From the NCBI RefSeq assembly GCF_964204865.1, contig NC_135250.1:7936001-8000000 (forward strand): a stretch of DNA of 64,000 bases. Reading direction: 5' to 3'. How positions within the stretch are numbered: position 1 is the stretch's first letter; every line of letters starts with the position of its first letter. Below are positions 1 through 12,267 of this stretch, piece by piece. The position numbers and the translations under genes are program-made. Source of the DNA: Styela clava. Lineage: Eukaryota. Under the pieces are notes generated by a model. The model searched no databases, was not told where the DNA came from, and saw nothing but the letters and a program-made list of their open reading frames with translations.

Positions 1-42
1 AGGTCTATTTCGTGTCAAATAATGGAGAATAATTTTTTCCAG

Positions 43-3000
43 CTCTGTGATTTTGGATTGAGCACCATGTCTACACTGACTGAACTTCGAACCAGTTCAA
101 TTATCGCAGGAGGTAACATTACATTTTCTTCAGCACAGTATTTGTATATACAGTAGTTTGTAAACAATCATGATATTACATCATTGTTTCTAATTCCCAA
201 CAAAAGATTTCAGACGACCTCGTTGGATTATAACTCAAATCAACTTTTTCATTTTTATATGATGTCTACTATTATTTAACATAGTGGATATGATCAAAAA
301 AAATAATGGCTGATTGTATATGTGAATAAATTCGGACTAAGCATGGATATATAGTTCATATCGCCACTTGAATGACATCTTCCGCGAAGGGCCTACTGGG
401 GTGTACAAATCAAAATAAAGAACACATTTTAAGATGTCTCAGTAATAATCAAATATTTATATATACTCGTCGGTAAGCTATCGATAGGAATTAACAAACA
501 CAATGACATGACCGTGTACGAATGTTAAATAAATTTATACACAGCCTGGAATTTACTTTGATGACTTCATACACAGCAAGGCGCATTCGACTGTTATAGC
601 AAATTTTTATTGAGTATTGGATAAATGTAATAGCATTCGTCTATGAAATCTTTTGAGTCATAACGGAATACGATAAGTAATGATAAAATGCTTCCGATCG
701 TAAAATGAAATTTATATTTGACACAAATATTGTCACAACATTTTACGACGGAAATGTGGAATTTTACGAGTTATGTTCGATAGTAAGGTTGACTTATTCA
801 TATAATATACCAACAACGCACCCACTTAAAATGTTTCGAAATTCCCTTCTAGTTAGGCTTACCATACGTCCCGGTTTAGCCGGGACAGTCCCGGTTTTGA
901 CAAGCGGTCCCGACGTCCCGCCCGGTAGCCTTAAATGTCCCGGTTATGCAGCATAGCAGTCATTAAAACATTTATATATACAAAGTTTTTTTATTTAACG
1001 GAAGCATCCAATTTATTTCTGATTCACTAGTTAACAAAGGAAGGACTACTGTGTTGTTGTGTCATATGTATTATATGTTCATTGCAATAATTTGAAACCC
1101 AACGTAAACAGCACTGCCGATATCTCATCAAAAAGCCAAATGGGATTGTAGAAAGACGAGTGGCAATAATGTTTCCTTAAAACTTAAACCGAGCATTTAT
1201 GGGACCGTTATAAGATGTGCGCTCATTTACTTTAAAACTGAATTCATCATCATTCCGCGGATTTGCCCGTTTGAGTAGAAAGTCTTGTTGTCAAATTGTA
1301 TAAATTCACACTGTTCAAGTAACAGAGCAGAAATCATTTTGACATTATGAGTACAACTATTGCAGTATGGCAACGAAGGTGTATCTCTTATGTCGATTAT
1401 TGAAATGTTCGAATAATTGAAAAGTTATTCTAACTCTCAATGATATTCTGCTTTTATACAAAATGTTTTGCGACCCCGCGTACGAAATAAAAATATAGCT
1501 AGTTTTGAAGGCCGGTATCTACTCGCAAAGATATGAAAGAAGTTTCAGATATTACTGAGGATCTGAATCGAACCAAAGTTTGTTCGATCCTCACTGTCCC
1601 GGTTTTCTGTTCCAGATATATGGTAAGCCTACTTCTAGTGAGAGTCCACAAATTGCTTTAATTTGAGCCTATATAAGATTGTGGCCTCGCTATAAGATTT
1701 GATAAGGTTTTTCTGGCTCGTGGTACTTTATCAGTCACTAAGATATTTCTTTTATTTATTTCAAAAATTTCTGCGGGCTGTATGAGATTCGATCATCACT
1801 CTGAATTTTTTTTTGTAATGATGTAATCATAATAAAAAATGGCGCTCCGTGCCGTGGCTACGCTATCGCATGTCAGCGATCCAGTGGTAGTCATAGGTGC
1901 GGCCTTCGGCCTCCCAACGAGGGGGAAAGCGCTCACGCGCACATTTACAGCTTCCACAATATTTACCCAGGGGAGTTGGATCTGCTGTTGTAGGATGACA
2001 TAATCGATTAGGCCTACTAAACTATTCAACTTAATATACTATTTATAGGTGTGCTGGGTGGCACTTTGGGTTTTATTGCCCCTGAAAGGTTACGAAACGT
2101 TGAGGCAAAGCCAACCACAAAAGCCGATGTTTATTCGTGAGTCAAGTATATATATAGTGAGATTAACTTACTACATCTGTATTATATTCTTCAATACCCT
2201 TTTTCATACTCCACAGGTTTGGAATTTTGATGTGGGAAATTATGGCAGACGAACAGCCGTTTGCAGGTTAGGAATGCTATTACTTAACAACCATTATTCG
2301 TTTCAGTGAGGGTTACAAAAGATTGGAGACTGCTTGGTTTTTGTCCGAACAGACTAAATAGCATGGAAGTAAAATCCATGTGTCTTACATCCAAACCAGG
2401 GGTCACTAAATTACGGCCCGCGGCGTCCTTTCATCTGGCCCGCAATAACACGAACAAAGTGTTGTCCGAATTTTTTTCCAAGAGATGTTTCCCCAGAAAT
2501 CGACTTCGATTTTTATTTCGTAATATTGGCCAATCAGCAAGATGCAAATAATGACGTAACAACAAGAGAGCTATGCTTAAATATATGGACACGTTACGCT
2601 GAAATTCACTGTGGTACGATACGGTAACTCACCAGCAGGCTGGACCACGGAACCTGTTCGCTGATCACGTGATCAATATGTGTTTGCGAAAGCGCCACAT
2701 GGTGGCAAATTCTGATGACGTCATAGCTCGAAAAAAAAGGAATCCCTAAAGTCCCATAGTATCCCATAGTAGTTTTTGAAATTAATAAAAGTGATAGCCT
2801 TCTAGAAAAAAAATTCCATTTTCAACTACTGAAAATTTCAAAGCAATTGGTCCAGTAATCAAAGAGAAAAGCAACCTTTTAAAAACGTGTAAAAGAACAA
2901 GAACAACAACAACATAATATTGAAACGATCGTTATGTCCACTAACGTGTTCAATAAGCCTTTTCGCATCCACTCATACAGATTTTCAGTCGTAGTTGTGA

Positions 3001-6000
3001 AAAATACCTCATTTTTGCGTTTTTGAATGCAATTCGTTAGTTTTTGGTTGTGTTTCAGAAATTTAAGTATGAATCAAATAAGTCAATCATCACTCTGCCT
3101 TCTTAGGAGGTGTAGTGTAATTGCTTAATAATCTAAAATTATTCTAGGAATAGCTGTGATATAGTAGGCTAAAATTCTCTACCGGTACGCAACAGTTTTT
3201 TGCGAAGGATGCACTCTTGGCGCGTGCTTTCGGCGAAACTGTTACTGTGTACGTTTCTTGTGCTTAAATAAACGTCGAACGTGCATTTTGCGCTAATAGT
3301 ACTGTAATCTCTCGTGTACTGCTCCAATTTCACAAGTCACATTAACTTTTGTACTGCTCACATGCGGCTATGCATGACAGCAGTGTTTTGCTAACAGCTA
3401 ACCTCGGGATAGCTTTCTAGAGATGGACATCTTGTATATTTCTTTTTTTATGATGTTCTCGATCTATATTCTGCGATATAGAATTTGATATCCAAATCTT
3501 CAGAAATGTAGAATTTATATTGTTGAATAAATTGAATGGATTTCCCGACTTTTGTGAATTTATTGTATTGCATTGAAAAAAATATTTGTCCGGCCCGTTT
3601 CAACACAGTTTAAGTCATACCTGGCCGCGGTCAAAAAAGTTTGGTGACCCCTGATCCAAACGAACGTCAATATTTGCCCAAGTTCCGCAAAAGTATTATT
3701 GAATGAGTGGTTTCCAAAATGTTAAAAATATTACCCAATATTATCAATTTGTGCTTCCAACTGTATGACACAAAAATAATAATTTCTTATTTCAAGAGGC
3801 AGCTGATGTATGACTCCCTGTGATATATATGTAATATTCGGAAATAAATAAATTGATATTTAGAACTCGGAACAAATGATTATCATTTGCGTCAAGCAGA
3901 GGAGATGCGACCGAATCCGTCGCTCATTCCAGATGTGTTTCCGAATGAACTCTTAACTATGATGCAGTTGTCGTGGTCACAACATCCAATAGATCGACCA
4001 AGTTTTAAAAGTAAGTTCTAAGTTAAGTTGATTCATATAAGACAAAGTAATATTGACCCATAAGTAGGTATACTATTCGCAAACTTTTCTACCAACAAAA
4101 CGATCAAATAATTTTGAAGTGAAATATTAAAACTTCGATTGCATTCTGAACAGAACTCTCCTAGCAGAGTGGCCTATAACACAAGTGATACGGTGAGCAT
4201 TGCCAACTTTCATGACATTTGACAGATTTTGTCAGCAACATAATTGAGGGGACGCTGGCCCAACGACTAACATGCGCTTGCCTTACCGCGCTTATTCGTA
4301 CATGCTTCGAAAAGCTCGCTGTGTGTAAATGTTGATCCAATAGTCTTTTCAATATTATAAATTACAGACTAATATTATGAATACAGACTAACTTATGTTA
4401 GGATGCAGGTACAGTACCACGATCAGTTTGTAGGTTGGGTTGAGTACGGTACCGGTACCTGTTAGTGGTACACGCGTACCGGGACCTGGTAGTGGTACAC
4501 GCAAACCGGTGCTACAGTACCGTCATAGGATCGGATATCGTGTCAAACTAGTCCATAATGTACCTTAAAACACTGACATATTACGGAAAATTACTTTAGT
4601 ACAGTATCTCTCAGATCAGCTACGCCCAACCACATGCGAATGCAAAGCAAAATCGCAGCGTCCCCTCAAAAAGTGGTTCTGGCAGCAGTCTTCACGCTCC
4701 GTTGATTCGTATGAAAGTTGGTGATTGGGACTCAAAAGCCTTATCTTCCAGAACTACTGAATTGTGTAAACGGCAGCAAGTCCATATTCCTTAATAAAAC
4801 ATTGCATTAAGTTGGTATGAGTTTAAAATATGGTAACTTTTTAATAAAGATTTGAGATGACGGAAGATGAAAAGTTTGACTTAAGCAGATAGTTGATTAC
4901 TGTATTCCTATTTTCAGAACTAGATGAAGATATGCTTTCAATAATTGAACGAATTCAAGACTACAAAGGACAAGTTCGGGAGTCCCGAATTATAATTTTA
5001 AGATTATACGAATCAGTAAGAATACTTTTCTCACCCAGCCTTACTTCTAAATCATCTTATCCATTTCATGGTAGGCCAGCCATCAGGATATGTAGAGGCT
5101 TCTTCGAAGACCGATTCAAGGGACCGAAAGTCCCAGTGTACGCACTGATCTGTGCAACCAAGTCATTCTGTTGTTCCAACACAGTGGCGTACCCATGATC
5201 ATTGGTGGGAGAGACATATAGTTTCTTTTGAAAACTCCATAATACACACAATTCAAAAATGGAGAATTCTGGACAGCGAGCAAAACCTTTAAAAAAGTTT
5301 AAAACATGAAAAATATCATGTGCCCGCTCACCAGCACTCACAAAACAAATAACAAAGATCACAAACCTAGTTAAACGAGGCTTGGGCCAGAAATCGGAAC
5401 CAAGAGGATTTTTAGCCGCGAACGATTTCTGAAATATTTGTGGTAATGCAAATACTGTACCAGTATTGCATTTGCAAAAAATCTTTCTCATCAAAAGTTC
5501 ATATACAGATACAAAATATTATAGACCATCAATTTCTGTATACAGCATTCAAACATATTATTATCGTGTTAGAGGGAAGAAAGGTGTCGGTGAGTTCTCT
5601 AGCCCCACGACCATTACTTAGCTTATATGACTTGAGAGGCTTCCATGAGGGTGTACTTTGTAGACTCATATTACTGTTGAGTGTTGACATTTGTCAGCGG
5701 TTACCAACTACCTTTCGTTACCTCATCACACAGGTTATATCTCGCCATAACACTAAAAAAGTTTCAATGTAACGGTTTCAATCGTCCTCATGGATATATA
5801 TATATATCAAATTCTAACACACCATAACTTTTCTGAGTGATTCAATAGTCTTGCTGCACACTAGCACAATTGTGTCAGTGTGCAGCAAAACTCTCGAATC
5901 ACTCAGGATAGTTATCTTCACTCTTGCATCCTTGCATTATATGCATACGGATCCACCGGCACAAAGGCGTAGAAGGATGAGTATAGTTGGTCCCATAGAA

Positions 6001-9000
6001 ACCCAATCGACAGCACATCATAACTTTGTACTTTTCTTTCTTTACTCAGGTAGGTGGTCAAACGTCATCCAGTCTCGGGTTTCACCAGCCATGCGATTCA
6101 AGTGTACAAATTGAATCATCTGTACCACAAAATGGAGAAGAAACATCTCCGAATACGTCACCCAAAGCGGTCGAAGAAAACACAACGCAAAAGGAGCACC
6201 CTATATCTATGCCCTGTTTAGATAATGAAGAGAGCGAATTTTTCCTCCCTCCTCCCCATTACACACTACAGGATGATACTGTTTTTGTTTCCGATTCCAT
6301 TCGGGCTGTACGCCCTCTGACTTGTGGTAAGCGTTTACAGTGCATGACTAATAGGCAAGAGGACTACTTCGCCAGTCACTTCTAAAATAGGAAATTTATT
6401 TCAGCTATATATATATAAGTAGCAAACATTCATATATACCGTATGTCGAACTCATGCATTTTATTTCAGGACATAGACTGAAAACCTTACTTCAGTCAAA
6501 AATCTTTGTCTTCATTGTTTCCGTTTTTTTATTATGTGGGATATCATCCGTGGGAATATGGTTGCTCGTATCAGAATTCAGTAAGTAACTCAAGATGACG
6601 GTTGTAATAATACACAGGCTACTGCAGTAACTTAGATAGAAACACTAGCAAGTATGACGAAATACTAGTGCCGGGCAACTAAAAATTGTTGAATGGAATG
6701 ATTTCGACGGACATATCAAAAGCAAATGTGGATGGCGAGAAACACCCCCAACCTGAACCCCAGTATATTGCGGGTAAAATATGACGTCATATCTCCGCTT
6801 CAACGGGCACGAGGCATACGATCTTGGTATCAATCGTTAGTGTGTTTCGAGCCCGTTATTATGAGCTATCGCTCGAACCATTCGAGCGTATTGGGCGATT
6901 TAAAGGATGTTCCCCTTTTTTGATATTTTTCTGCTTTTTTCTCTGCAGTTGTATGTTTGTTCATTGAAAATTGAAGCTCGTAAACCACCAAAAATAGCTA
7001 GGGAACATTCGTTCTTTGTTTTGAGACTTCAGAGTAGACTTTGGACTATTCATTTGTCGTCGACACAGGGAATAGTGTTTATGACTGCGGACGAGAGTCG
7101 TCTTTTTATTATTGTTATGCAGTTGATTTCGGTTCTAAAGGGATATTGTTATATAAGACGTATTTGTAAGTTTATTAGGATTCTGGTAGCTATAAATCAG
7201 ACAAGGTACCGTAATGGAGAGTGAGAGCGATTTTGATGCAAGGTAAGTGCAATACCTGCATGCATTCTTCTGCTATTTTTTAAAAAAAATTCTCTTTATA
7301 TTCTGAGAAAATGATAGTTTGTAAGCTGACTGTGGCAATTGTTTGAGCAAGCCTCATAGCTTGGACTTGTTATTAGTAATAATCCAGTCGTTAATCAACG
7401 CAATTTTTCTTTTAGTTCTGGTGACGAGTGGGAAGAGACGAGTGAGTCATCTAGCTCCGATGAAGAGGTTGTCCCAGTCCCGGCTAGGCGCTATGCTGCA
7501 AGCACTGAAGATGTACCAGCTGAAGCAGCAGCGTCAACGGGCGGAATGTTCGGAGCTTCGAGCCCTCGGCGATCACGAGTTTGCAGGGTGTGTTCTGAAC
7601 GGGACAAAAAAGAAAGAGAAAGAGAAGGCAGTAGCAGAAAATTGAAACAAAAAAGGTCTTCATATTGGTGTGAGAAATGCCAGGTAACACTTTGTGTTAC
7701 CCCGTGTTTCGAGAAGTTTCACACCCTCCCAAACTATTGGGAATAGGAATCAAAACTTATGTGCAATATTGTGATGTTGACTTTATCAGAGACTGTGATT
7801 TTTGTTGACTTTGCCAGAGACTGTGATTTTTGTTGACTTTGTCAGAAACTGATTTTTCTTTTTACGTGCACCAAGGTGTTTTATGTACATACTGTGTAAT
7901 TCTTCATTTTCGCTATTATTATTTCGTATGCACACTTTCTTTTCACATTGTTTTTCACCACTGTTATTCACATTCTTTCAAAACTGACTGAATTTAATTT
8001 TTTCGTGTCATTTTTTACTCGTATGTAAATATAAATATCTGATTTTTCGAAAACAAAATTTTCAATTTTTTCGAAAATTTCTGCCATTTACCTGAAATTC
8101 ATCAGCCTACCATGACAATTTCATGTCAGTTAGAGAAAAACTGCAAATTTTCCCAATAAGGTTACACCTCTACCCTTCTTGTGAGTAAGTTTGATATGTG
8201 TAGTGTTTATAGTTTGTGTGTGAGTATTTTGTCTTTGAAAGTGGTCATTTTAGTCATATTTCGGACGAAATTTGAGAGCCGTAAAAAGTGTGTCAAAGCT
8301 GAGCCATGCCACTGGCTTGCTGTTAGAACAGGTGTGAAAAACTTAGTTTCCTGGTGCTGTGCTTGGAGTTGCCTTTCAAAAAAACCAAGAACTGTAGGGA
8401 TTGGGCCTATGGTTAGCTTTTGACAATTTTTTAAAGTTTGTGAATTTTGTTTGAAAACGCCAGGAATATAGTGTTTTTTCGATATCGCGGTCCAGGGCAG
8501 AAAGAGTTAAATTTCATTTTCCACTAAAATTCTAGTCTACTTTTGTTTCCAGCGATAAATATTATATATCTGTAGTCCTAATCGGGTATAGAAAATTTCA
8601 ATATTATCTTTGTCCTATTACGGTCAACTTTTTTTTAGAAGGTGGCCAAGCAGATCCGTACAGTAGATGCATATCAATCGGGGGAACTTGTCACAATTGG
8701 TATGAGCACGACTGCTCCGGGGGTTATAAAACCGGCTTATGTGACGGGGAGTTTTCGAACACTCAATGCTGTCTTCCGTGCAATGCGGCATGTATGAAAT
8801 ATGTGTCAGATTGTTTTATCTTATTTACTAGTTTGTTAATCATATTAATAAAAACCTGAAAAGTCTTAATGATATAAAGTATTGTTTTGCAGGTAAGGAC
8901 GCTGAAGCTAGCTATAAGGACATCCCCTGCGAAGAGATTAATGGGATTTGTAAGCATAAAACTAATTATTGCTCACAAACATACATTAAGGAAAAGTGTG

Positions 9001-9934
9001 ATGGTCCGGAAGACAGGCGATGTTGCCCACCCAATCGTGAGTGCGAGAGTATTTAGAAATGAAATATATACAAATATCTATATATTATTATCCCAAGAAG
9101 TTTTGAGTTGAAATACTGAAGAAATACGATGTCAAAATTATTCAGATAATAGTTATAGAAACCACCAAATATTTAGCTGCTAAATTTTCTAAAATAACTC
9201 TATTATTGACGCGTTCATTCATTTTTAGAAACAAATTACGCTCGTCTTTTCGATGATTGTATGATTTGTATATGTAACGCCTGTTAAATCGTAAATACTG
9301 TATGGTGAAATCAATTGATTTTATGCTGCCTGAAGATACATCGCAAAATATGCAGATCCGACCAATGACATTGACCAACGTGGTACCAAATTATTTGGTC
9401 ATAAACGCGGTGCACGCTTCAGTGGTAGCGGCTCAAACACTGACATATGTCTATTATCATTTCAGCTGCAGACACAGAATGCACAAAACGGGGAGGGATG
9501 TGTCAAAATTGGGTCGAATATACTTGCGTTGCTGGATACAGGAGTGGATTATGCATCGGTGGGTCCGCGATTAGATGCTGTTTGCCATGTGATACCAAAT
9601 GTAAGTAACTTACATATTTTTCTTCCTACCGCTAGTCAACTTCTGCCATCGTTAATTCTTATTTATGCTTAGTTTTCTTAATTTTAATTTTTTTCCGATC
9701 GTAAATCTCAGCATTAAATTTCATCGTGAACCCATACGGTACAAGAACGATAACTTCATACTGACCGGTACTTATGCTATCTTATACGCAGGCTATGATG
9801 ATGAAGCAATATTTCATGATCCGGCATGTGATAGTTTGCATGGGACTTGTATGGATAATACTAATTATTGTGCCAGTGGATATCTACCCGAAAAATGTCA
9901 TGGACCGGACTCCAGGCAATGCTGTCCCCCATAG
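43..9934 (+). CDS. RIPK/TKL-like protein kinase with C-terminal TM helix and four Cys-rich defensin-like repeats (5' part lies outside the window)
   Basis: Manually spliced, phase-consistent GT-AG exons: 43-112 (LCDFGLS), 2049-2136 (GGTLGFIAPE...KADVYS), 2217-2266 (FGILMWEI), 3864-4010 (MRP...W.QHP.DRPSFK), 4918-5015, 6050-6326, 6470-6580 (TM IFVFIVSVFLLCGISSVGIWLLV), 8639-8791, 8893-9036, 9466-9600, 9792-9934 (TAG). Total 1416 nt, open throughout, 471 aa within the window. Confidence 0.85.
854..1631. mobile_element. Non-autonomous hAT (Blackjack-like) element
   Basis: TIRs taggcttaccata / tatggtaagccta; 8-bp TSD cttctagt at 846-853 and 1632-1639; subterminal gtcccgg repeats. Confidence 0.9.
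2397..3653. mobile_element. Non-autonomous hAT (Charlie-like) element
   Basis: TIRs caggggtcactaaa / tttggtgacccctg; 8-bp TSD atccaaac at 2389-2396 and 3654-3661; subterminal ggccc/ggccgc motifs. Confidence 0.9.
2561..2956 (-). mobile_element. Helentron/HINE-like element nested in the hAT MITE
   Basis: Begins aacaagagagctatgc (CTTGTT end on the - strand with a small hairpin); sub-terminal inverted motif ggacacg/cgtgttc; second copy at 47932-48213; the homologous host sequence at ~44880-45110 lacks the insert. Confidence 0.6.
4200..4725. mobile_element. Degenerate fold-back/MITE-like element
   Basis: Inverted pairs ccaactttcat/atgaaagttgg and gaggggacgctg/cagcgtcccctc flank a gtac-rich centre; ends and TSD not resolved. 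Confidence 0.45.
6470..6580 (+). CDS. Transmembrane-helix exon of the kinase gene
   Basis: tttcag|GA...TTC A|gtaag; translates GHRLKTLLQSKIFVFIVSVFLLCGISSVGIWLLVSEF, a ~23-aa hydrophobic stretch preceded by basic residues. Confidence 0.85.
6750..8510 (+). mobile_element. Internally deleted piggyBac (PGBD4-like) element in a kinase intron; left end approximate
   Basis: Encodes the piggyBac C-terminal Cys-rich domain (CRVC...YWCEKCQVTLCVTPCFEKFH); right end ...ggcagaaagag|TTAA (8507-8510); no DDD catalytic core; left TIR not found. Confidence 0.7.
7214..7746 (+). CDS. Spliced mini-transposase: acidic N-terminus fused to the piggyBac Cys-rich domain (~119 aa)
   Basis: Exon 7214-7242 (MESESDFDAS, AG|gtaagt) plus exon 7416-7746 (tttag|T; SGDEWEETSESSSSDEE...RRSRVCRVC...FHTLPNYWE*), in frame with no internal stop. 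Confidence 0.65.
8639..9934 (+). CDS. Four phase-1 exons, each encoding a six-Cys beta-defensin-like module
   Basis: CISIGGTCHNWYEHDCSGGYKTGLCDGEFSNTQCC; CEEINGICKHKTNYCSQTYIKEKCDGPEDRRCC; CTKRGGMCQNWVEYTCVAGYRSGLCIGGSAIRCC; CDSLHGTCMDNTNYCASGYLPEKCHGPDSRQCC. Confidence 0.88.
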
Positions 9935-10244
9935 CTTCCTATAAGTTCTAAACTGGTATGTTCCAAGTCAGAGACTCGCTGTGCGTTTATGCATCTCTGT
10001 ATCATAGAACTGGATACGCAAGGCATTATGCTCCTCACAAAACCTCGTTAATGCAAAATTACATGAGCACAAAATGTTTAGTGTTATGAATCAATGAAAT
10101 AGAGAATAATAGCAGTGAACAAATATCAAAAAGGGTGCTCCCTGTGATACAAACAATTTAAAAACCTTCATACTAAATACCATGCCGTGACAAGAGTACG
10201 GCGCAAACATTTTTATGATACTTCGATTGTGTTATACTAGGATA

Positions 10245-10701
10245 GGATTTACATATTTATCCAAGGGGAGAGGAAAGTCGATAAGACGGAATCCCGTGGG
10301 ATGGGATGGGACAGCACAGATTTTATTTCCCATGGGACACGAAAACCGTATGATTTTCGGGGAAATGACGGTAAAACATGGACATGGACTTCTTATCCAT
10401 ATATTCGAGCATATATATCTCTCTTCTTAGCTATAAAGAGCAAAATATATTCAGCATTAACAATATACTTCGTGAAGGGGCTGATGGACTCATTTATAAT
10501 ATTTATGAATATAAAGTTAACGAAGTCCGTGAATTTTGTTGTTTTGTATGTCTCTTCGTACATGTAGTCCTGTTTAGTAGACGCTAAACTTGAATTTAAT
10601 AATTTTTATTGAATTGTATTCCAATGGGAATCCCATTGGATGGGACAGGCATGCTATGGGATGGGAATGGGACAGGAAAATATGTCCTATGGACAAGCCT
10701 G
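10245..10701. mobile_element. SINE-like 3' fragment joined to a truncated hAT-like MITE end
   Basis: 10245-10290 is the reverse complement of 44670-44713 (ccgtcttatcg.ctttcctctcccc..gataaatat.taaatcc); gggat/gggac repeats end in ggacaagcctg. Confidence 0.45.
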
Positions 10702-11179
10702 AGTATTTGAAATCAGGTTATAAAAATTTGAAGACCTGAGTGGATACCCCGGCCGATGATCAAGCAACTGCTCCTTTTCAATTAAATCTCATAAGTATGG
10801 CTAATGGTACCAATATTTCAGAATGCGGTGACAGAGCATTTGAAATCTGGTTTTCAGTTTAGCAAAATTGTTGTGTTTCTAGTTTTTAGTGTTGCATGTT
10901 ATTGTATTGAAAATGTGCGTATCAACAACATAATACCTTACGGGTTGCAGTAGAGTAGACACTACAGTAAGTAATTTGAGGAGAGTCAGTTTTGTGCATG
11001 TATGGGGGAATAGGAATTTTCAAAAAACTGATAAGACGACTTAATTACTCGGTTACCAGTCCGAGTAGATTATGGCAATCGCTAGCCAGCATATTGTTAG
11101 TAGAATTAGCCACCATCGTTCTCAACGGTCAGAATCGGAGATCTCCAGCATTAAATGGTCGGCGCTTCTGAAGTATGCG

Positions 11180-11385
11180 TACCAAGATGGCGGACACCAG
11201 ACCGCGGTATATGTACCAGGTTAAGATAAGGCCATAATTTTATGTACAAATACTACGGGAGTCACTTGGCTAGTCCCCCGACTCGTAATAGAACTAAAAT
11301 AAGGAAAATTGGAATAAAATTATGACCTAACCATGACCTGGTACACATACTGCGTTCCGGTGTCCGCCATCTTCAGGAGTACCAA
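11180..11385. mobile_element. Fold-back MITE
   Basis: ~60-bp imperfect inverted repeats aagatggcggacacc...ataattttat / ataaaattat...ggtgtccgccatctt; partial second copy at ~22948-23040. Confidence 0.75.
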
Positions 11386-12267
11386 ATGGCCGGCCATAAA
11401 ATCCGCGACTTGACGACTAAACTGCCTCAACGCAATCAAAAAAAACAAGAGAAATACATTTTGGAATTAATTCTTCTTATTTTGCGAATAAAATTGACAG
11501 ATAAATAAACAAGAAAAAGTGAAAACGAAATTCACCACGAGTAAAATAAACCTACTCATTGCTCTCTTTATATTTCATGAAATATGATCATGCACAAGTA
11601 TTAAATGGATGCAATTGGTTGCGGAAGAGAATTCGGTATTAAACAAGACAGATTAGCAAATAGCAAAAATAAAATGATTGATTTCAAAAGAATACTTTGT
11701 GACTTCAAATTACTTTAGGTAAACTATTGCGCCCTACGATTGGACAATCAACAACAAAATATGAAGGCGATAAAGACAGAGCAATAAAAAGGGCGCTGAA
11801 ATTAAATGATGATTGCCATCGGTTCGTTAAAATGAAATAAATTAGTGCTAGACAAGCAATCACGTGAATGGAATTTAGAATAATAAGTCTAAACAAAAAA
11901 TATCCCAAAATGCAAGACAATATGCAATAAGTTTGCTCTTAATGAATGAATCAAATACAATCAGAACGGAAACTTGGATGTACAAGTGCATGGTTTTAAT
12001 CGCTTTTTTCTGGCAACGCGTTACAGATGAGGAAATAACATGATTATAGTCAAAAATGGGCGTTGCATTTGCATAACAAATATCGAAAGAGAGGCCAGGC
12101 AATACTACGTCATATTACGCAAGACGTCTCTCGACTACATTTTTTATATTCCTCTCTTCTCAATTCGCGAGCACATTGCTCAATAACGCAATCACAAGCC
12201 TTCAATTTTAATCGAATTCTCTCGCAAACAATTTTTAAATACTGAAAATATTCCAATTTCTCACACA

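What the first reader, a model, noticed from the sequence alone, without database searches (positions are those of the whole stretch)
8639..9934. A-B-A-B defensin-like ectodomain built from symmetric phase-1 exons
Seen: modules 1 and 3 share GGxCxNW.E..C..GY..GLC.G....CCLPC, while modules 2 and 4 share GxC...TNYC...Y..EKC.GP..R.CCPP. An extra CxxxC (CNAAC, CDTKC) straddles each A-B intron, so a two-exon cassette was duplicated. All introns are phase 1, typical of shuffled extracellular modules. Recalled, not searched: similar C-x6-C...C...C...CC modules occur in beta/big defensins, tick carboxypeptidase inhibitor and N-termini of some invertebrate g-type lysozymes and peptidoglycan amidases. 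Inference: the modules bind microbial surface or peptidoglycan.
Basis: partly seen in the sequence, partly recalled or inferred. Interest (0 to 1): 0.75.

Follow-up and report, generated by a model that had tools for sequence, protein, structure and literature searches.

The report
Cysteine-rich repeat ectodomain of ascidian kinase
Four small exons of a sea-squirt gene encode two copies of a known defensin-like cysteine-rich repeat pair, normally found on bacteria-digesting enzymes, but here placed behind a membrane helix at the tail of a RIP-type protein kinase, which suggests an unusual "inverted" surface sensor for bacteria.

Summary
Exons 8639-8791, 8893-9036, 9466-9600 and 9792-9934 (+) encode A-B-A-B six-cysteine modules, and all their introns are phase 1. 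Three splice joints appear in RNA-like contigs.

The genome is Styela clava. The exons are the C-terminal part of a RefSeq-predicted 640-aa protein, "RIPK3-like". It has an N-terminal RIP-family kinase, no signal peptide, one membrane helix, then the four modules. The same layout occurs in a paralogue on another contig, in Ciona intestinalis and in an unnamed transcript contig.

The module is already in print. It is the "cysteine-rich repeat" pair of rusticalin (Daugavet 2019, 2020), reported there as beta-defensin/tick-carboxypeptidase-inhibitor-like and as accompanying cell-wall hydrolases. My searches reproduce that link: g-type and i-type lysozymes, PGRP amidases and M15 peptidases.

The kinase/receptor context is absent from the texts I could read. 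Binding of bacterial wall material is inferred from these fusions only. The one experiment I found, on a placozoan lysozyme, shows a stabilising, cleaved pro-domain.

Pfam beta-defensin membership was not met. No earlier finding of this scan on other DNA was shown to me.

The parts
8639..8791 (+). Exon A1: A-type cysteine-rich repeat (C-x6-C-x7-C-x8-C-x8-CC-x2-C-x3-, with the last Cys codon split by the intron); phase 1 at both ends.
   Evidence: Joint 8791->8893 in run X1 (one contig, side of 27 letters). Maps to P0170 residues 452-501 at 100% identity.
8893..9036 (+). Exon B2: B-type repeat (C-x6-C-x6-C-x8-C-x7-CC); phase 1 at both ends.
   Evidence: X1 record 5 covers 8893-9036 joined to 9466. 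Maps to P0170 residues 502-548.
9466..9600 (+). Exon A3: second A-type repeat (C-x6-C-x7-C-x8-C-x7-CC-x2-C-x3-, with a split Cys codon); phase 1 at both ends.
   Evidence: Joints 9036->9466 and 9600->9792.
9792..9934 (+). Exon B4: second B-type repeat, ending in CCPP and stop TAG at 9932-9934. The transcript continues as 3' UTR to at least 10100.
   Evidence: Joint 9600->9792 in X1, X2 and X6. X1 record 5 runs to 10100.
6470..6580 (+). Transmembrane exon (IFVFIVSVFLLCGISSVGIWLLV), 111 nt, phase 1 at both ends.
   Evidence: reading. Maps to P0170 residues 414-451. Highest hydropathy of the protein: Kyte-Doolittle mean over 19 residues is 2.64. No contig covers it in the RNA-like runs.
6050..6326 (+). 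Cytoplasmic linker exon (VGGQTSS...RPLTC); phase 0 at its start and phase 1 at its end.
   Evidence: Covered at low depth in X1. No Pfam family.
4911..5010 (+). Exon just after the kinase domain (LDEDMLSIIERIQDYKGQVRESRIIILRLYES). The end coordinate is approximate.
   Evidence: tblastn of P0170 residues 287-330. The exact donor site was not checked.
3857..4009 (+). Kinase exon (subdomain XI, ...HPIDRPSF). Limits are those of the tblastn match.
   Evidence: Pfam PK_Tyr_Ser-Thr profile positions 225-252.
2033..2265 (+). Two kinase exons (2033-2137 with GTLGFIAPE...KADVYS; 2209-2265) and the short intron between them. Limits are those of the tblastn matches.
40..114 (+). Kinase exon with the DFG motif (LCDFGLSTMSTLTELRTSS). 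The three first coding exons lie upstream of the window at L003 8099-9095.

Best explanation
What it is (well supported). The four exons encode two tandem copies of the rusticalin-type pair of cysteine-rich repeats (CRR; A-type + B-type, beta-defensin-like six-cysteine modules). They form the whole C-terminal part, about 190 aa with 28 Cys, of a single-pass membrane protein of Styela clava. Its N-terminal 300 aa are a RIP-family Ser/Thr kinase with intact catalytic motifs and no signal peptide. The kinase should therefore be cytoplasmic and the repeats extracellular or luminal, a type II 'inverted' receptor-kinase layout. The layout is conserved in ascidians.

How it most likely works (inferred). 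Elsewhere the same repeat pair sits on secreted peptidoglycan-degrading enzymes. I therefore take the ectodomain to recognise bacterial cell-wall or envelope material, or bacteria as particles. Multivalent ligand would cluster the receptor, activate the RIP-type kinase by trans-autophosphorylation and start an immune response.

Shown: exons, splicing of three joints, homology, architecture, domain associations. Inferred: topology, ligand, signalling.
For: Gene and architecture.
- Pfam finds only a kinase domain, at residues 21-293.
- The nearest solved kinases are RIPK1 (2e-35), RIPK3 (9e-33) and RIPK2 (3e-32).

Conservation of the layout.
- The paralogue on contig C13 has kinase exons, a TM exon and A-B-A-B in the same order. 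Its proteins are P0006 and P0169.
- P0005, a 421-aa ORF on a 1481-nt Logan contig (so intron-free), runs from the kinase C-lobe through the TM helix to B4. It is 43% identical to P0170 over 429 aa, E 6e-119.
- Ciona intestinalis LOC100180162 (P0201) is colinear with P0170, 28% identical over 488 aa, E 3e-40, with a kinase C-lobe by Pfam.
- Between the two Styela paralogues, kinase (61.7%) and ectodomain (60.1%) are equally conserved. The linker is not (33.6%).

The modules are extracellular elsewhere. P0001, P0002, P0042 and P0196 carry them behind N-terminal hydrophobic leaders that I read as signal peptides (no signal-peptide predictor was run).

Association with cell-wall hydrolases.
- I scanned 131 of the top 150 module-bearing representatives (19 were left out for length). 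Matches were Amidase_2 9, Destabilase 5, Phage_lysozyme2 3, Tae4 3, Peptidase_M15_4 2, and Phage_lysozyme, Lys, VanY, 3D, SpoIID and GH25 1 each.
- One search listed 30 proteins. Six are named g-type lysozyme or lysozyme, 4 carry Amidase_2 and 2 carry M15_4.
- Styela P0196 residues 125-306 match goose lysozyme at 1e-58.
- Two Styela A-B loci are followed by M15_4 exons.
- The same association is published (PMC7379824, passages).
Against: - No binding data exist for any CRR that I could find. The one functional study I saw (PMC12855814, passages) reports that the CRR domain of a placozoan g-lysozyme stabilises the enzyme, lowers its activity and is cleaved off at maturation. That is a pro-domain role, not a binding role.
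- The rusticalin authors also propose an inhibitor/regulator role.
- The TM->A1 splice of this locus was not seen. RNA-like contigs have zero depth on 6323-6604. One X1 contig runs unspliced over 8481-8794. Depth on the linker exon (6-9) is about tenfold lower than on B2-B4 (88).
- The positive-inside rule fits P0170 (K+R 3 on the N side, 1 on the C side). It is reversed in the C13 paralogue (1 vs 3).
- The ectodomain is acidic (net -8, pI 5.15), unlike cationic defensins.
- The beta-defensin relationship is not significant in most of my tests.
Confidence: 0.55

Rival explanations
1. The repeats bind a protein partner rather than a microbial surface. By analogy with the double-headed tick carboxypeptidase inhibitor, or as a pro-domain-like stabiliser, they could dock a secreted peptidase or lysozyme, or another host protein. 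The kinase would then report that interaction, or the ectodomain would merely stabilise the protein.
For: - Published HHpred similarity of the CRR pair to tick carboxypeptidase inhibitor 1ZLH, and the authors' alternative 'regulatory subunit' scenario (PMC6339383, sections 7 and 11).
- The placozoan lysozyme CRR domain stabilises the enzyme and reduces its activity (PMC12855814, passages).
- One of 30 Styela modules gives a weak Inhibitor_I68 hit, E 0.087.
- The ectodomain is acidic.
Against: - CRRs accompany at least 11 unrelated Pfam families of wall-degrading enzymes, not one enzyme type. That is easier to explain by a shared substrate or target than by specific inhibition of each fold.
- Multi-repeat proteins without any enzyme domain exist: P0001 with 6 repeats plus a TM helix, and P0002 with 5-6 repeats plus Sushi domains.
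Confidence: 0.2
2. The ectodomain is an effector, not a sensor. It would be a membrane-tethered or shed defensin-like antimicrobial domain, and the kinase would regulate its trafficking or shedding.
For: - Beta-defensin-like cysteine framework, with marginal hits to AvBD11 (E 0.0087), Defensin-BvL (0.05) and platypus DLP-2 (0.83).
- Small secreted A-B proteins exist, for example alligator P0042 at 121 aa, named 'Beta-defensin' by UniRef.
Against: - Net charge is -8 for this ectodomain and -10 for P0005. Across 351 modules, 36% have net charge of 0 or below and only 27% have +3 or above.
- No furin-like or other cleavage motif was looked for, and none was seen by eye between the TM helix and A1. 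Only about 8 residues separate them.
- Kinase and ectodomain are conserved equally between the paralogues, as expected for coupled function.
Confidence: 0.1
3. Gene-model artefact. The kinase+TM gene and the A-B-A-B exons would be separate transcription units merged by prediction.
For: - No read-level support for the 6580->8639 joint.
- An unspliced contig covers 8481-8794.
- There is a tenfold depth difference between the linker exon and the B2-B4 exons.
- A separate repeat-derived spliced transcript lies inside the 2-kb intron (all).
Against: - There is no start codon or signal peptide in frame upstream of A1. The open frame 8536-8700 has no Met.
- Exon phases match: the TM exon ends in phase 1 and A1 starts in phase 1.
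- The same order is seen at the C13 paralogue.
- The intron-free contig protein P0005 and Ciona P0201 carry kinase, TM helix and repeats in one ORF.
Confidence: 0.07

Closest known systems
Rusticalin-type cysteine-rich repeats (CRR pair) of Styela rustica rusticalin and rusticalin-like proteins (Daugavet et al. 2019, PMC6339383; 2020, PMC7379824)
   Same: - Same motif, Cx6Cx6-7Cx8Cx7CC, occurring as a pair.
- My profile of Styela modules hits the cluster of Ciona XP_002128942.1, which is listed in their Table 1, at E 4.5e-16.
- Same association with cell-wall hydrolases.
   Different: - Here the pair is doubled (A-B-A-B).
- It lies at the C-terminus, behind a membrane helix and a RIP-family kinase, instead of at the N-terminus of a secreted enzyme.
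- 'Kinase', 'receptor' and 'transmembrane' occur 0 times in the main text of PMC7379824, and 'kinase' and 'receptor' 0 times in PMC6339383, where 'transmembrane' was not searched. The supplementary table was not seen.
N-terminal CRR domain of the placozoan g-type lysozyme PLys (PMC12855814, passages read)
   Same: Two repeats with six disulphides precede a g-type lysozyme. Styela P0196, Ciona P0206 and lamprey P0202 have the same arrangement.
   Different: In PLys the domain is a cleaved, stabilising pro-domain. In the window's gene there is no enzyme to stabilise, and the domain is the whole extracellular part.
Beta-defensins, the avian double beta-defensin AvBD11 (PDB 6QEU) and tick carboxypeptidase inhibitor (1ZLH)
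   Same: - Six-cysteine framework ending in CC, a Gly before the second Cys, and tandem pairs.
- Both domains of AvBD11 align to two tandem modules, E 0.0087.
- A published HHpred link exists.
   Different: - No Pfam threshold is reached.
- A-type modules carry an extra CxxxC.
- The domain is acidic rather than cationic.
- The fold was not tested here.
Bacterial PASTA-domain Ser/Thr kinases (PknB/PrkC/Stk1)
   Same: Same order: N-terminal cytoplasmic kinase, one TM helix, then C-terminal extracellular repeats. In the bacterial case these repeats bind muropeptides (established knowledge, recalled).
   Different: There are no PASTA domains. The NCBIfam PknB_PASTA_kin match covers only the kinase part and scores 101 bits against a cut-off of 450. 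This is an analogy of design, not homology of the sensor.
Vertebrate NOD1/NOD2-RIPK2 peptidoglycan sensing and plant LysM receptor kinases (recalled)
   Same: A RIP/TKL-group kinase is coupled to recognition of bacterial wall fragments.
   Different: - In vertebrates the sensor and RIPK2 are separate cytosolic proteins joined by CARD domains.
- Plant LysM receptor kinases are type I, with the ectodomain at the N-terminus.
- Here the sensor candidate and the kinase are one type II polypeptide. No CARD, RHIM or death domain is found.

Membership tests
Rusticalin-type cysteine-rich repeat (CRR) | Cysteine motif Cx6Cx6-7Cx8Cx7CC (as given in PMC6339383, section 5) | tested here: met
   B2, A3 and B4 fit exactly. 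A1 has x8 in the last loop. In the alignment of 30 Styela modules the six Cys and one Gly are invariant.
Rusticalin-type cysteine-rich repeat (CRR) | Significant sequence similarity to published rusticalin-like proteins | tested here: met
   The profile hits P0081 at E 4.5e-16. Its cluster holds XP_002128942.1, which is listed in Table 1 of the paper. Styela loci on C17 and C2 have A-B followed by M15_4 exons.
Rusticalin-like protein (whole architecture) | Signal peptide, an N-terminal CRR pair, then a C-terminal MD-peptidase domain | tested here: not met
   P0170 has no signal peptide. It has a kinase at 21-293 and a TM helix at about 425-447, and the CRRs are C-terminal. There is no peptidase domain.
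Beta-defensin (Pfam PF00711; SCOP g.9.1) | Match to the family HMM at or above the curated threshold | tested here: not met
   - The four window modules give no PF00711 hit.
- 2 of 30 Styela modules hit it at best E 0.24.
- The genome-wide PF00711 search hits no module locus.
Beta-defensin (Pfam PF00711; SCOP g.9.1) | Sequence similarity to solved beta-defensin-fold peptides | tested here: inconclusive
   - Broad profile A2: AvBD11 6qeu E 0.0087, Defensin-BvL 0.05, DLP-2 0.83.
- Profile A1: best defensin hit E 2.4.
- Profile A3: 0 hits.
Beta-defensin (Pfam PF00711; SCOP g.9.1) | Three-stranded sheet with C1-C5, C2-C4, C3-C6 disulphides | not testable with these tools
The Atlas did not hold the sequences. 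A published HHpred analysis supports the fold.
Big defensin (Pfam PF14862) | Match to the family HMM; hydrophobic N-terminal domain before the defensin domain | tested here: not met
   The genome-wide PF14862 search gives two hits on C14 at E 0.87 and none at module loci. No hydrophobic domain precedes any module, by reading.
RIP kinase family (RIPK1-5-like, TKL group) | Kinase domain closest to RIPKs, with intact catalytic motifs | tested here: met
   The best solved relatives are RIPK1, RIPK3, RIPK2 and RIPK4, before CTR1/MLT/TAK1. VAMK, HLDLKSDN, DFG and APE are read in P0170. No phylogeny of kinases was made.
RIP kinase family (RIPK1-5-like, TKL group) | Partner domain typical of vertebrate members (RHIM, death domain, CARD, ankyrin repeats) | tested here: not met
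   Pfam at E<=0.01 finds only the kinase domain in P0170, P0169 and P0201. RHIM is short and may escape Pfam. The stretch VQIE in the linker is not a canonical core (my reading).
PASTA-type receptor kinase | PASTA repeats in the extracellular part | tested here: not met
   The NCBIfam PknB_PASTA_kin match is limited to profile positions 12-271 (the kinase part), at 101 bits against a cut-off of 450.

The most novel reading that the evidence does not exclude
Ascidians possess a conserved family of type II ('inverted') transmembrane RIP-family receptor kinases. Their ectodomain is built from the same cysteine-rich repeat pairs that accompany animal lysozymes, PGRP amidases and M15 peptidases. 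On this reading it is a cell-surface pattern-recognition receptor that senses bacterial wall material directly and signals through its own RIP kinase. Chordates would then have had a one-polypeptide counterpart of NOD-RIPK2 sensing, convergent in design with bacterial PASTA kinases and plant LysM receptor kinases.
Probability: 0.35. Interest if true: 0.78.

Novelty: new variant of a known kind. Interest (0 to 1): 0.55.

Why it matters
In vertebrates RIP kinases are cytosolic adaptors that receive signals from separate receptors. A RIP-type kinase that is itself a membrane receptor, with its kinase at the N-terminus and a bacterial-enzyme-associated repeat domain outside the cell, would be a new receptor architecture in animals. 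It would also bear on how chordate innate immunity was wired before NOD/TNFR-RIPK pathways.

It also gives the widespread but functionally unclear cysteine-rich repeat a test case in which it cannot be acting as a pro-domain of an enzyme. Binding assays on this ectodomain could therefore settle what the repeat recognises.

If the ectodomain proves inert towards microbes, the finding reduces to one more domain shuffle of a known module.

Tried and rejected
The protein Atlas did not hold module B2 or the stored homologue P0015.
- Short free-standing peptides. A word search with the module profile for 26-90-aa proteins scored none of 13 candidates at E<=0.01. By the tool's length rule this blank says nothing about longer kin.
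- Pfam on single modules gave only sub-threshold hits. Among the 30 Styela modules these were Defensin_3 3 of 30, Defensin_beta 2, Defensin_int 1, Inhibitor_I68 1 and PTN_MK_N 1. In one search the window modules gave Defensin_int and Defensin_3 for B2 and PTN_MK_N for A1.
- The midkine N-domain resemblance (E 0.06, 0.39) was considered and set aside as not significant.
- PF00711 and PF14862 searched in the whole genome hit no module locus.
- The AB-cassette profile A3 against PDB gave 0 hits.
- I looked for tRNA genes in the introns, because Daugavet et al. report them in the Ciona gene. There are 0 in window 1-12000.
- An alternative signal-peptide first exon directly upstream of A1 was rejected. 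The open frame 8536-8700 has no Met.
- My first guess of a 6054 acceptor for the linker exon was rejected in favour of 6050.
- Literature searches that found nothing on a kinase- or receptor-linked form. One search found 0 occurrences of 'transmembrane', 'tunicate', 'Ciona' or 'Styela' in PMC9573974. Searches found no description of the module on PGRPs or lysozymes beyond reviews. The relevant papers came only.
- My recollection that oyster PGRPs carry a 'defensin-like domain' (Itoh & Takahashi) could not be checked in the library.
- The search of earlier findings by words gave nothing.
- The C18 cluster could not be fetched whole.

Full report
**Observation.**
On the + strand of the window there are four short exons: A1 8639-8791, B2 8893-9036, A3 9466-9600 and B4 9792-9934. 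Each is bounded by AG and GT.
- Translated one by one, each gives a roughly 45-aa module with six framework cysteines.
- A1 and A3 share GGxCxNW.E..C..GY..GLC.G....CCLPC. B2 and B4 share GxC...TNYC...Y..EKC.GP..R.CCPP.
- BLASTP gives A1/A3 20 of 41 identical (E 1e-13), B2/B4 22 of 45 (E 3e-17) and A1/B2 13 of 37 (E 4e-4). All four are homologous and the A/B alternation is real.
- Every one of these exons begins with two bases and ends with one base of a split codon (phase 1). The Cys that closes the extra CxxxC is the split codon at both A-B introns.
- B4 ends in CCPP followed by TAG (9932-9934).
- At DNA level only one 31-nt direct repeat (87%) remains between B2 and B4, so the duplication is old.

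**Transcript evidence.**
I laid contigs of three RNA-like runs and one DNA-like run on 5900-10100.
- One 762-nt contig of X1 reads 8893-9036 | 9466-9600 | 9792-10100.
- The 9600->9792 joint is also in X2 and X6.
- The 8791->8893 joint is in one X1 contig with only 27 letters on its shorter side.
- The DNA-like run X10 shows no joint and covers 6761-10100 contiguously.
- Not shown: the joint from the transmembrane exon (ends at 6580) to A1 (8639). RNA-like contigs have no depth on 6323-6604. One X1 contig runs unspliced over 8481-8794. Depth on the linker exon is 6-9, against 88 on B2-B4. These are contigs, so depth is a poor measure.

**The gene.**
Instead, a search with the paralogue's ectodomain returned P0170. 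[quoted passage not shown]
- tblastn maps it colinearly to three exons upstream of the window (L003 8099-9095) and to window 40-9931. A few residues differ, which I take as allelic or assembly differences.
- At the TM|A1 junction P0170 reads SEF-N-GQADP. The window, using the AG at 8637-8638, would read SEF-K-GGQADP. A second AG at 8640-8641 makes a tandem acceptor possible. I could not resolve this.
- The genome is Styela clava, by the names and contig lengths of several hits.
- Pfam finds only a protein kinase domain, at residues 21-293.
- The nearest solved kinases are RIPK1 (2e-35), RIPK3, RIPK2 and RIPK4.
- VAMK, HLDLKSDN, DFG and APE are present.
- The N-terminus is hydrophilic, with no signal peptide. 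The only strongly hydrophobic segment is IFVFIVSVFLLCGISSVGIWLLV, encoded by exon 6470-6580.
- All 28 cysteines of the four modules lie behind that segment.
- The kinase therefore needs the cytosol, and the modules are extracellular in other proteins, so the topology should be N-in/C-out. This is an inference. The positive-inside rule agrees for P0170 but not for the paralogue.

**Conservation of the architecture.**
- Contig C13 of the same genome carries six kinase exons, a TM exon and A-B-A-B in the same order. Its proteins are P0006 and P0169.
- P0005, a 421-aa ORF on a 1481-nt Logan contig and therefore intron-free, runs from the kinase C-lobe through the linker and TM helix to B4. It is 43% identical to P0170 over 429 aa.
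- Ciona intestinalis LOC100180162 (P0201) is colinear as well, 28% identical over 488 aa, E 3e-40, with the kinase C-lobe confirmed by Pfam.
- Between the two Styela paralogues the kinase is 61.7% identical, the ectodomain 60.1% and the linker 33.6%.
- In a tree of 45 modules, the A and B types separate on one branch (97/85; 0 of 500 label shuffles as low). The A1s, A3s, B2s and B4s of P0170, P0169 and P0005 each group together. The cassette duplication therefore predates these genes' divergence. A newt A-B-A-B protein duplicated independently. The alignment has only 40 columns, and 22 of 42 inner branches are unresolved.

**What the module is.**
- A profile of 30 modules from the Styela genome finds 648 representatives at E<=1e-3 among 1.84 billion proteins, and 163 at E<=1e-10.
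- I scanned 131 of the top 150 with Pfam (19 longer than 620 aa were left out). The co-occurring families at E<=1e-4 were Amidase_2 9, Destabilase 5, Phage_lysozyme2 3, Tae4 3, Peptidase_M15_4 2, and Phage_lysozyme, c-type Lys, VanY, 3D, SpoIID and GH25 1 each. Lipase, trypsin, VWD, stanniocalcin, trefoil and TSP1 also appeared, and a kinase once.
- Named examples:
  - Dreissena and Gigantopelta i-type lysozymes.
  - Saccoglossus, Glandiceps and Solemya PGRPs.
  - Ciona and amphioxus M15_4 proteins.
  - A newt A-B-A-B protein with a weak M23 match.
  - G-type lysozymes of Styela, Ciona, Clavelina and a lamprey, and an Oikopleura PGRP.
  - Styela P0196 residues 125-306 match goose lysozyme at 1e-58.
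- In Styela itself the A-B pair also precedes M15_4 exons at two loci.
- It also builds a type I membrane protein (P0001) and the head of a Sushi/WAP protein (P0002).

**Prior art.**
- Daugavet et al. 2019 (PMC6339383; abstract and sections 5, 7 and 11 read) described this pair as the N-terminal 'cysteine-rich repeats' of rusticalin.
  - Its motif is Cx6Cx6-7Cx8Cx7CC.
  - They reported HHpred similarity to beta-defensins and to tick carboxypeptidase inhibitor.
  - Their Table 1 lists XP_002128942.1, which is in my hit cluster.
- Daugavet et al. 2020 (PMC7379824; passages) found 382 CRR proteins, mostly joined to phage lysozyme, PF01510 and M15 domains. 'Kinase', 'receptor' and 'transmembrane' do not occur in its main text. 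Its supplementary table was not seen.
- A 2026 paper (PMC12855814; passages) shows that the CRR domain of a placozoan g-lysozyme stabilises the enzyme, lowers its activity and is cleaved off.

**Defensin question.**
- Pfam thresholds are not met.
- PF00711 and PF14862 hit no module locus in the genome.
- PDB profile searches give AvBD11 at E 0.0087 with one broad profile, and nothing significant with two others.
- The ectodomain is acidic, with net charge -8.
- The fold test could not be run.
- I therefore file the module as a rusticalin-type CRR. I treat 'beta-defensin-like' as a published, plausible relationship that is untested here.

**Verdict.**
The finding is real. The module is known. 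The receptor-kinase context is the new part, and ligand binding is inferred only from domain fusions.

Noticed in passing
window 6730-8510 (inside the TM|A1 intron): RNA-like contigs of X1, X2 and X6 cover 6730-7240 joined to 7414-8510 (GT..AG joint, absent from the DNA-like run). Loose ends at about 6725/6730 and 8510 suggest the borders of a repeat copy expressed from several loci. The stretch holds an open frame 7360-7743 with a weak piggyBac-type zinc-finger match (zf-Tnp_2, E 0.0012).
   Followed up: partly
window about 850-1500: A dispersed repeat. The DNA search of the genome with window 1-1500 gave 50 matches, many at 75-97% identity over positions 850-1500. It lies in the intron between two kinase exons.
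   Followed up: no
window 8637-8641: Two AG dinucleotides 3 nt apart lie at the A1 acceptor, so a tandem (NAGNAG-type) acceptor is possible. The database isoform P0170 has one residue fewer here (SEF-N-GQ) than the upstream acceptor would give (SEF-K-GGQ). The residue itself also differs.
   Followed up: no
L003 5781-6635 (just upstream of the kinase gene, + strand): An uninterrupted 285-codon open frame containing a VGCGGG-type motif that I recall from SAM-dependent methyltransferases. It was not scanned against any library.
   Followed up: no
L003 278-2043 (+ strand): Several open stretches rich in cysteine, with CxxGY..G patterns that look like Sushi/CCP exons of a neighbouring gene. Not tested.
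   Followed up: no
L024 138-2303 (+ strand; contig C13): A further RIP-like kinase (exons matching K3-K6 at 46-75% identity) lies tail-to-tail next to the paralogous kinase-TM-ABAB gene. No repeat modules follow it on its own strand within the stretch held.
   Followed up: no
proteins P0009/P0161 (Pleurodeles), P0079 (Lissotriton), P0042 (Alligator), P0202 (Lethenteron): The A-B pair also exists in vertebrates. There is a newt A-B-A-B protein with a C-terminal part that matches Peptidase_M23 weakly (E 1.4e-4) and that I recall as LECT2-like. There are small secreted A-B proteins in a newt and an alligator. A lamprey g-type lysozyme carries an N-terminal A-B pair.
   Followed up: partly
G000 C14:12376684-12376800 and C14:12387551-12387667 (- strand): Two identical-scoring weak matches to the big-defensin model PF14862 (E 0.87, 18.5 bits), 11 kb apart. 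They could be tandem big-defensin-like genes or chance.
   Followed up: no
protein P0004/P0162 (Neocallimastix californiae) and metagenome proteins P0003, P0007, P0011: Anaerobic-fungus and unnamed metagenome proteins carry up to 19 module-like stretches by the profile. They do not fit my cysteine-spacing pattern (0 regex matches in P0004), which suggests a divergent branch of the repeat.
   Followed up: no
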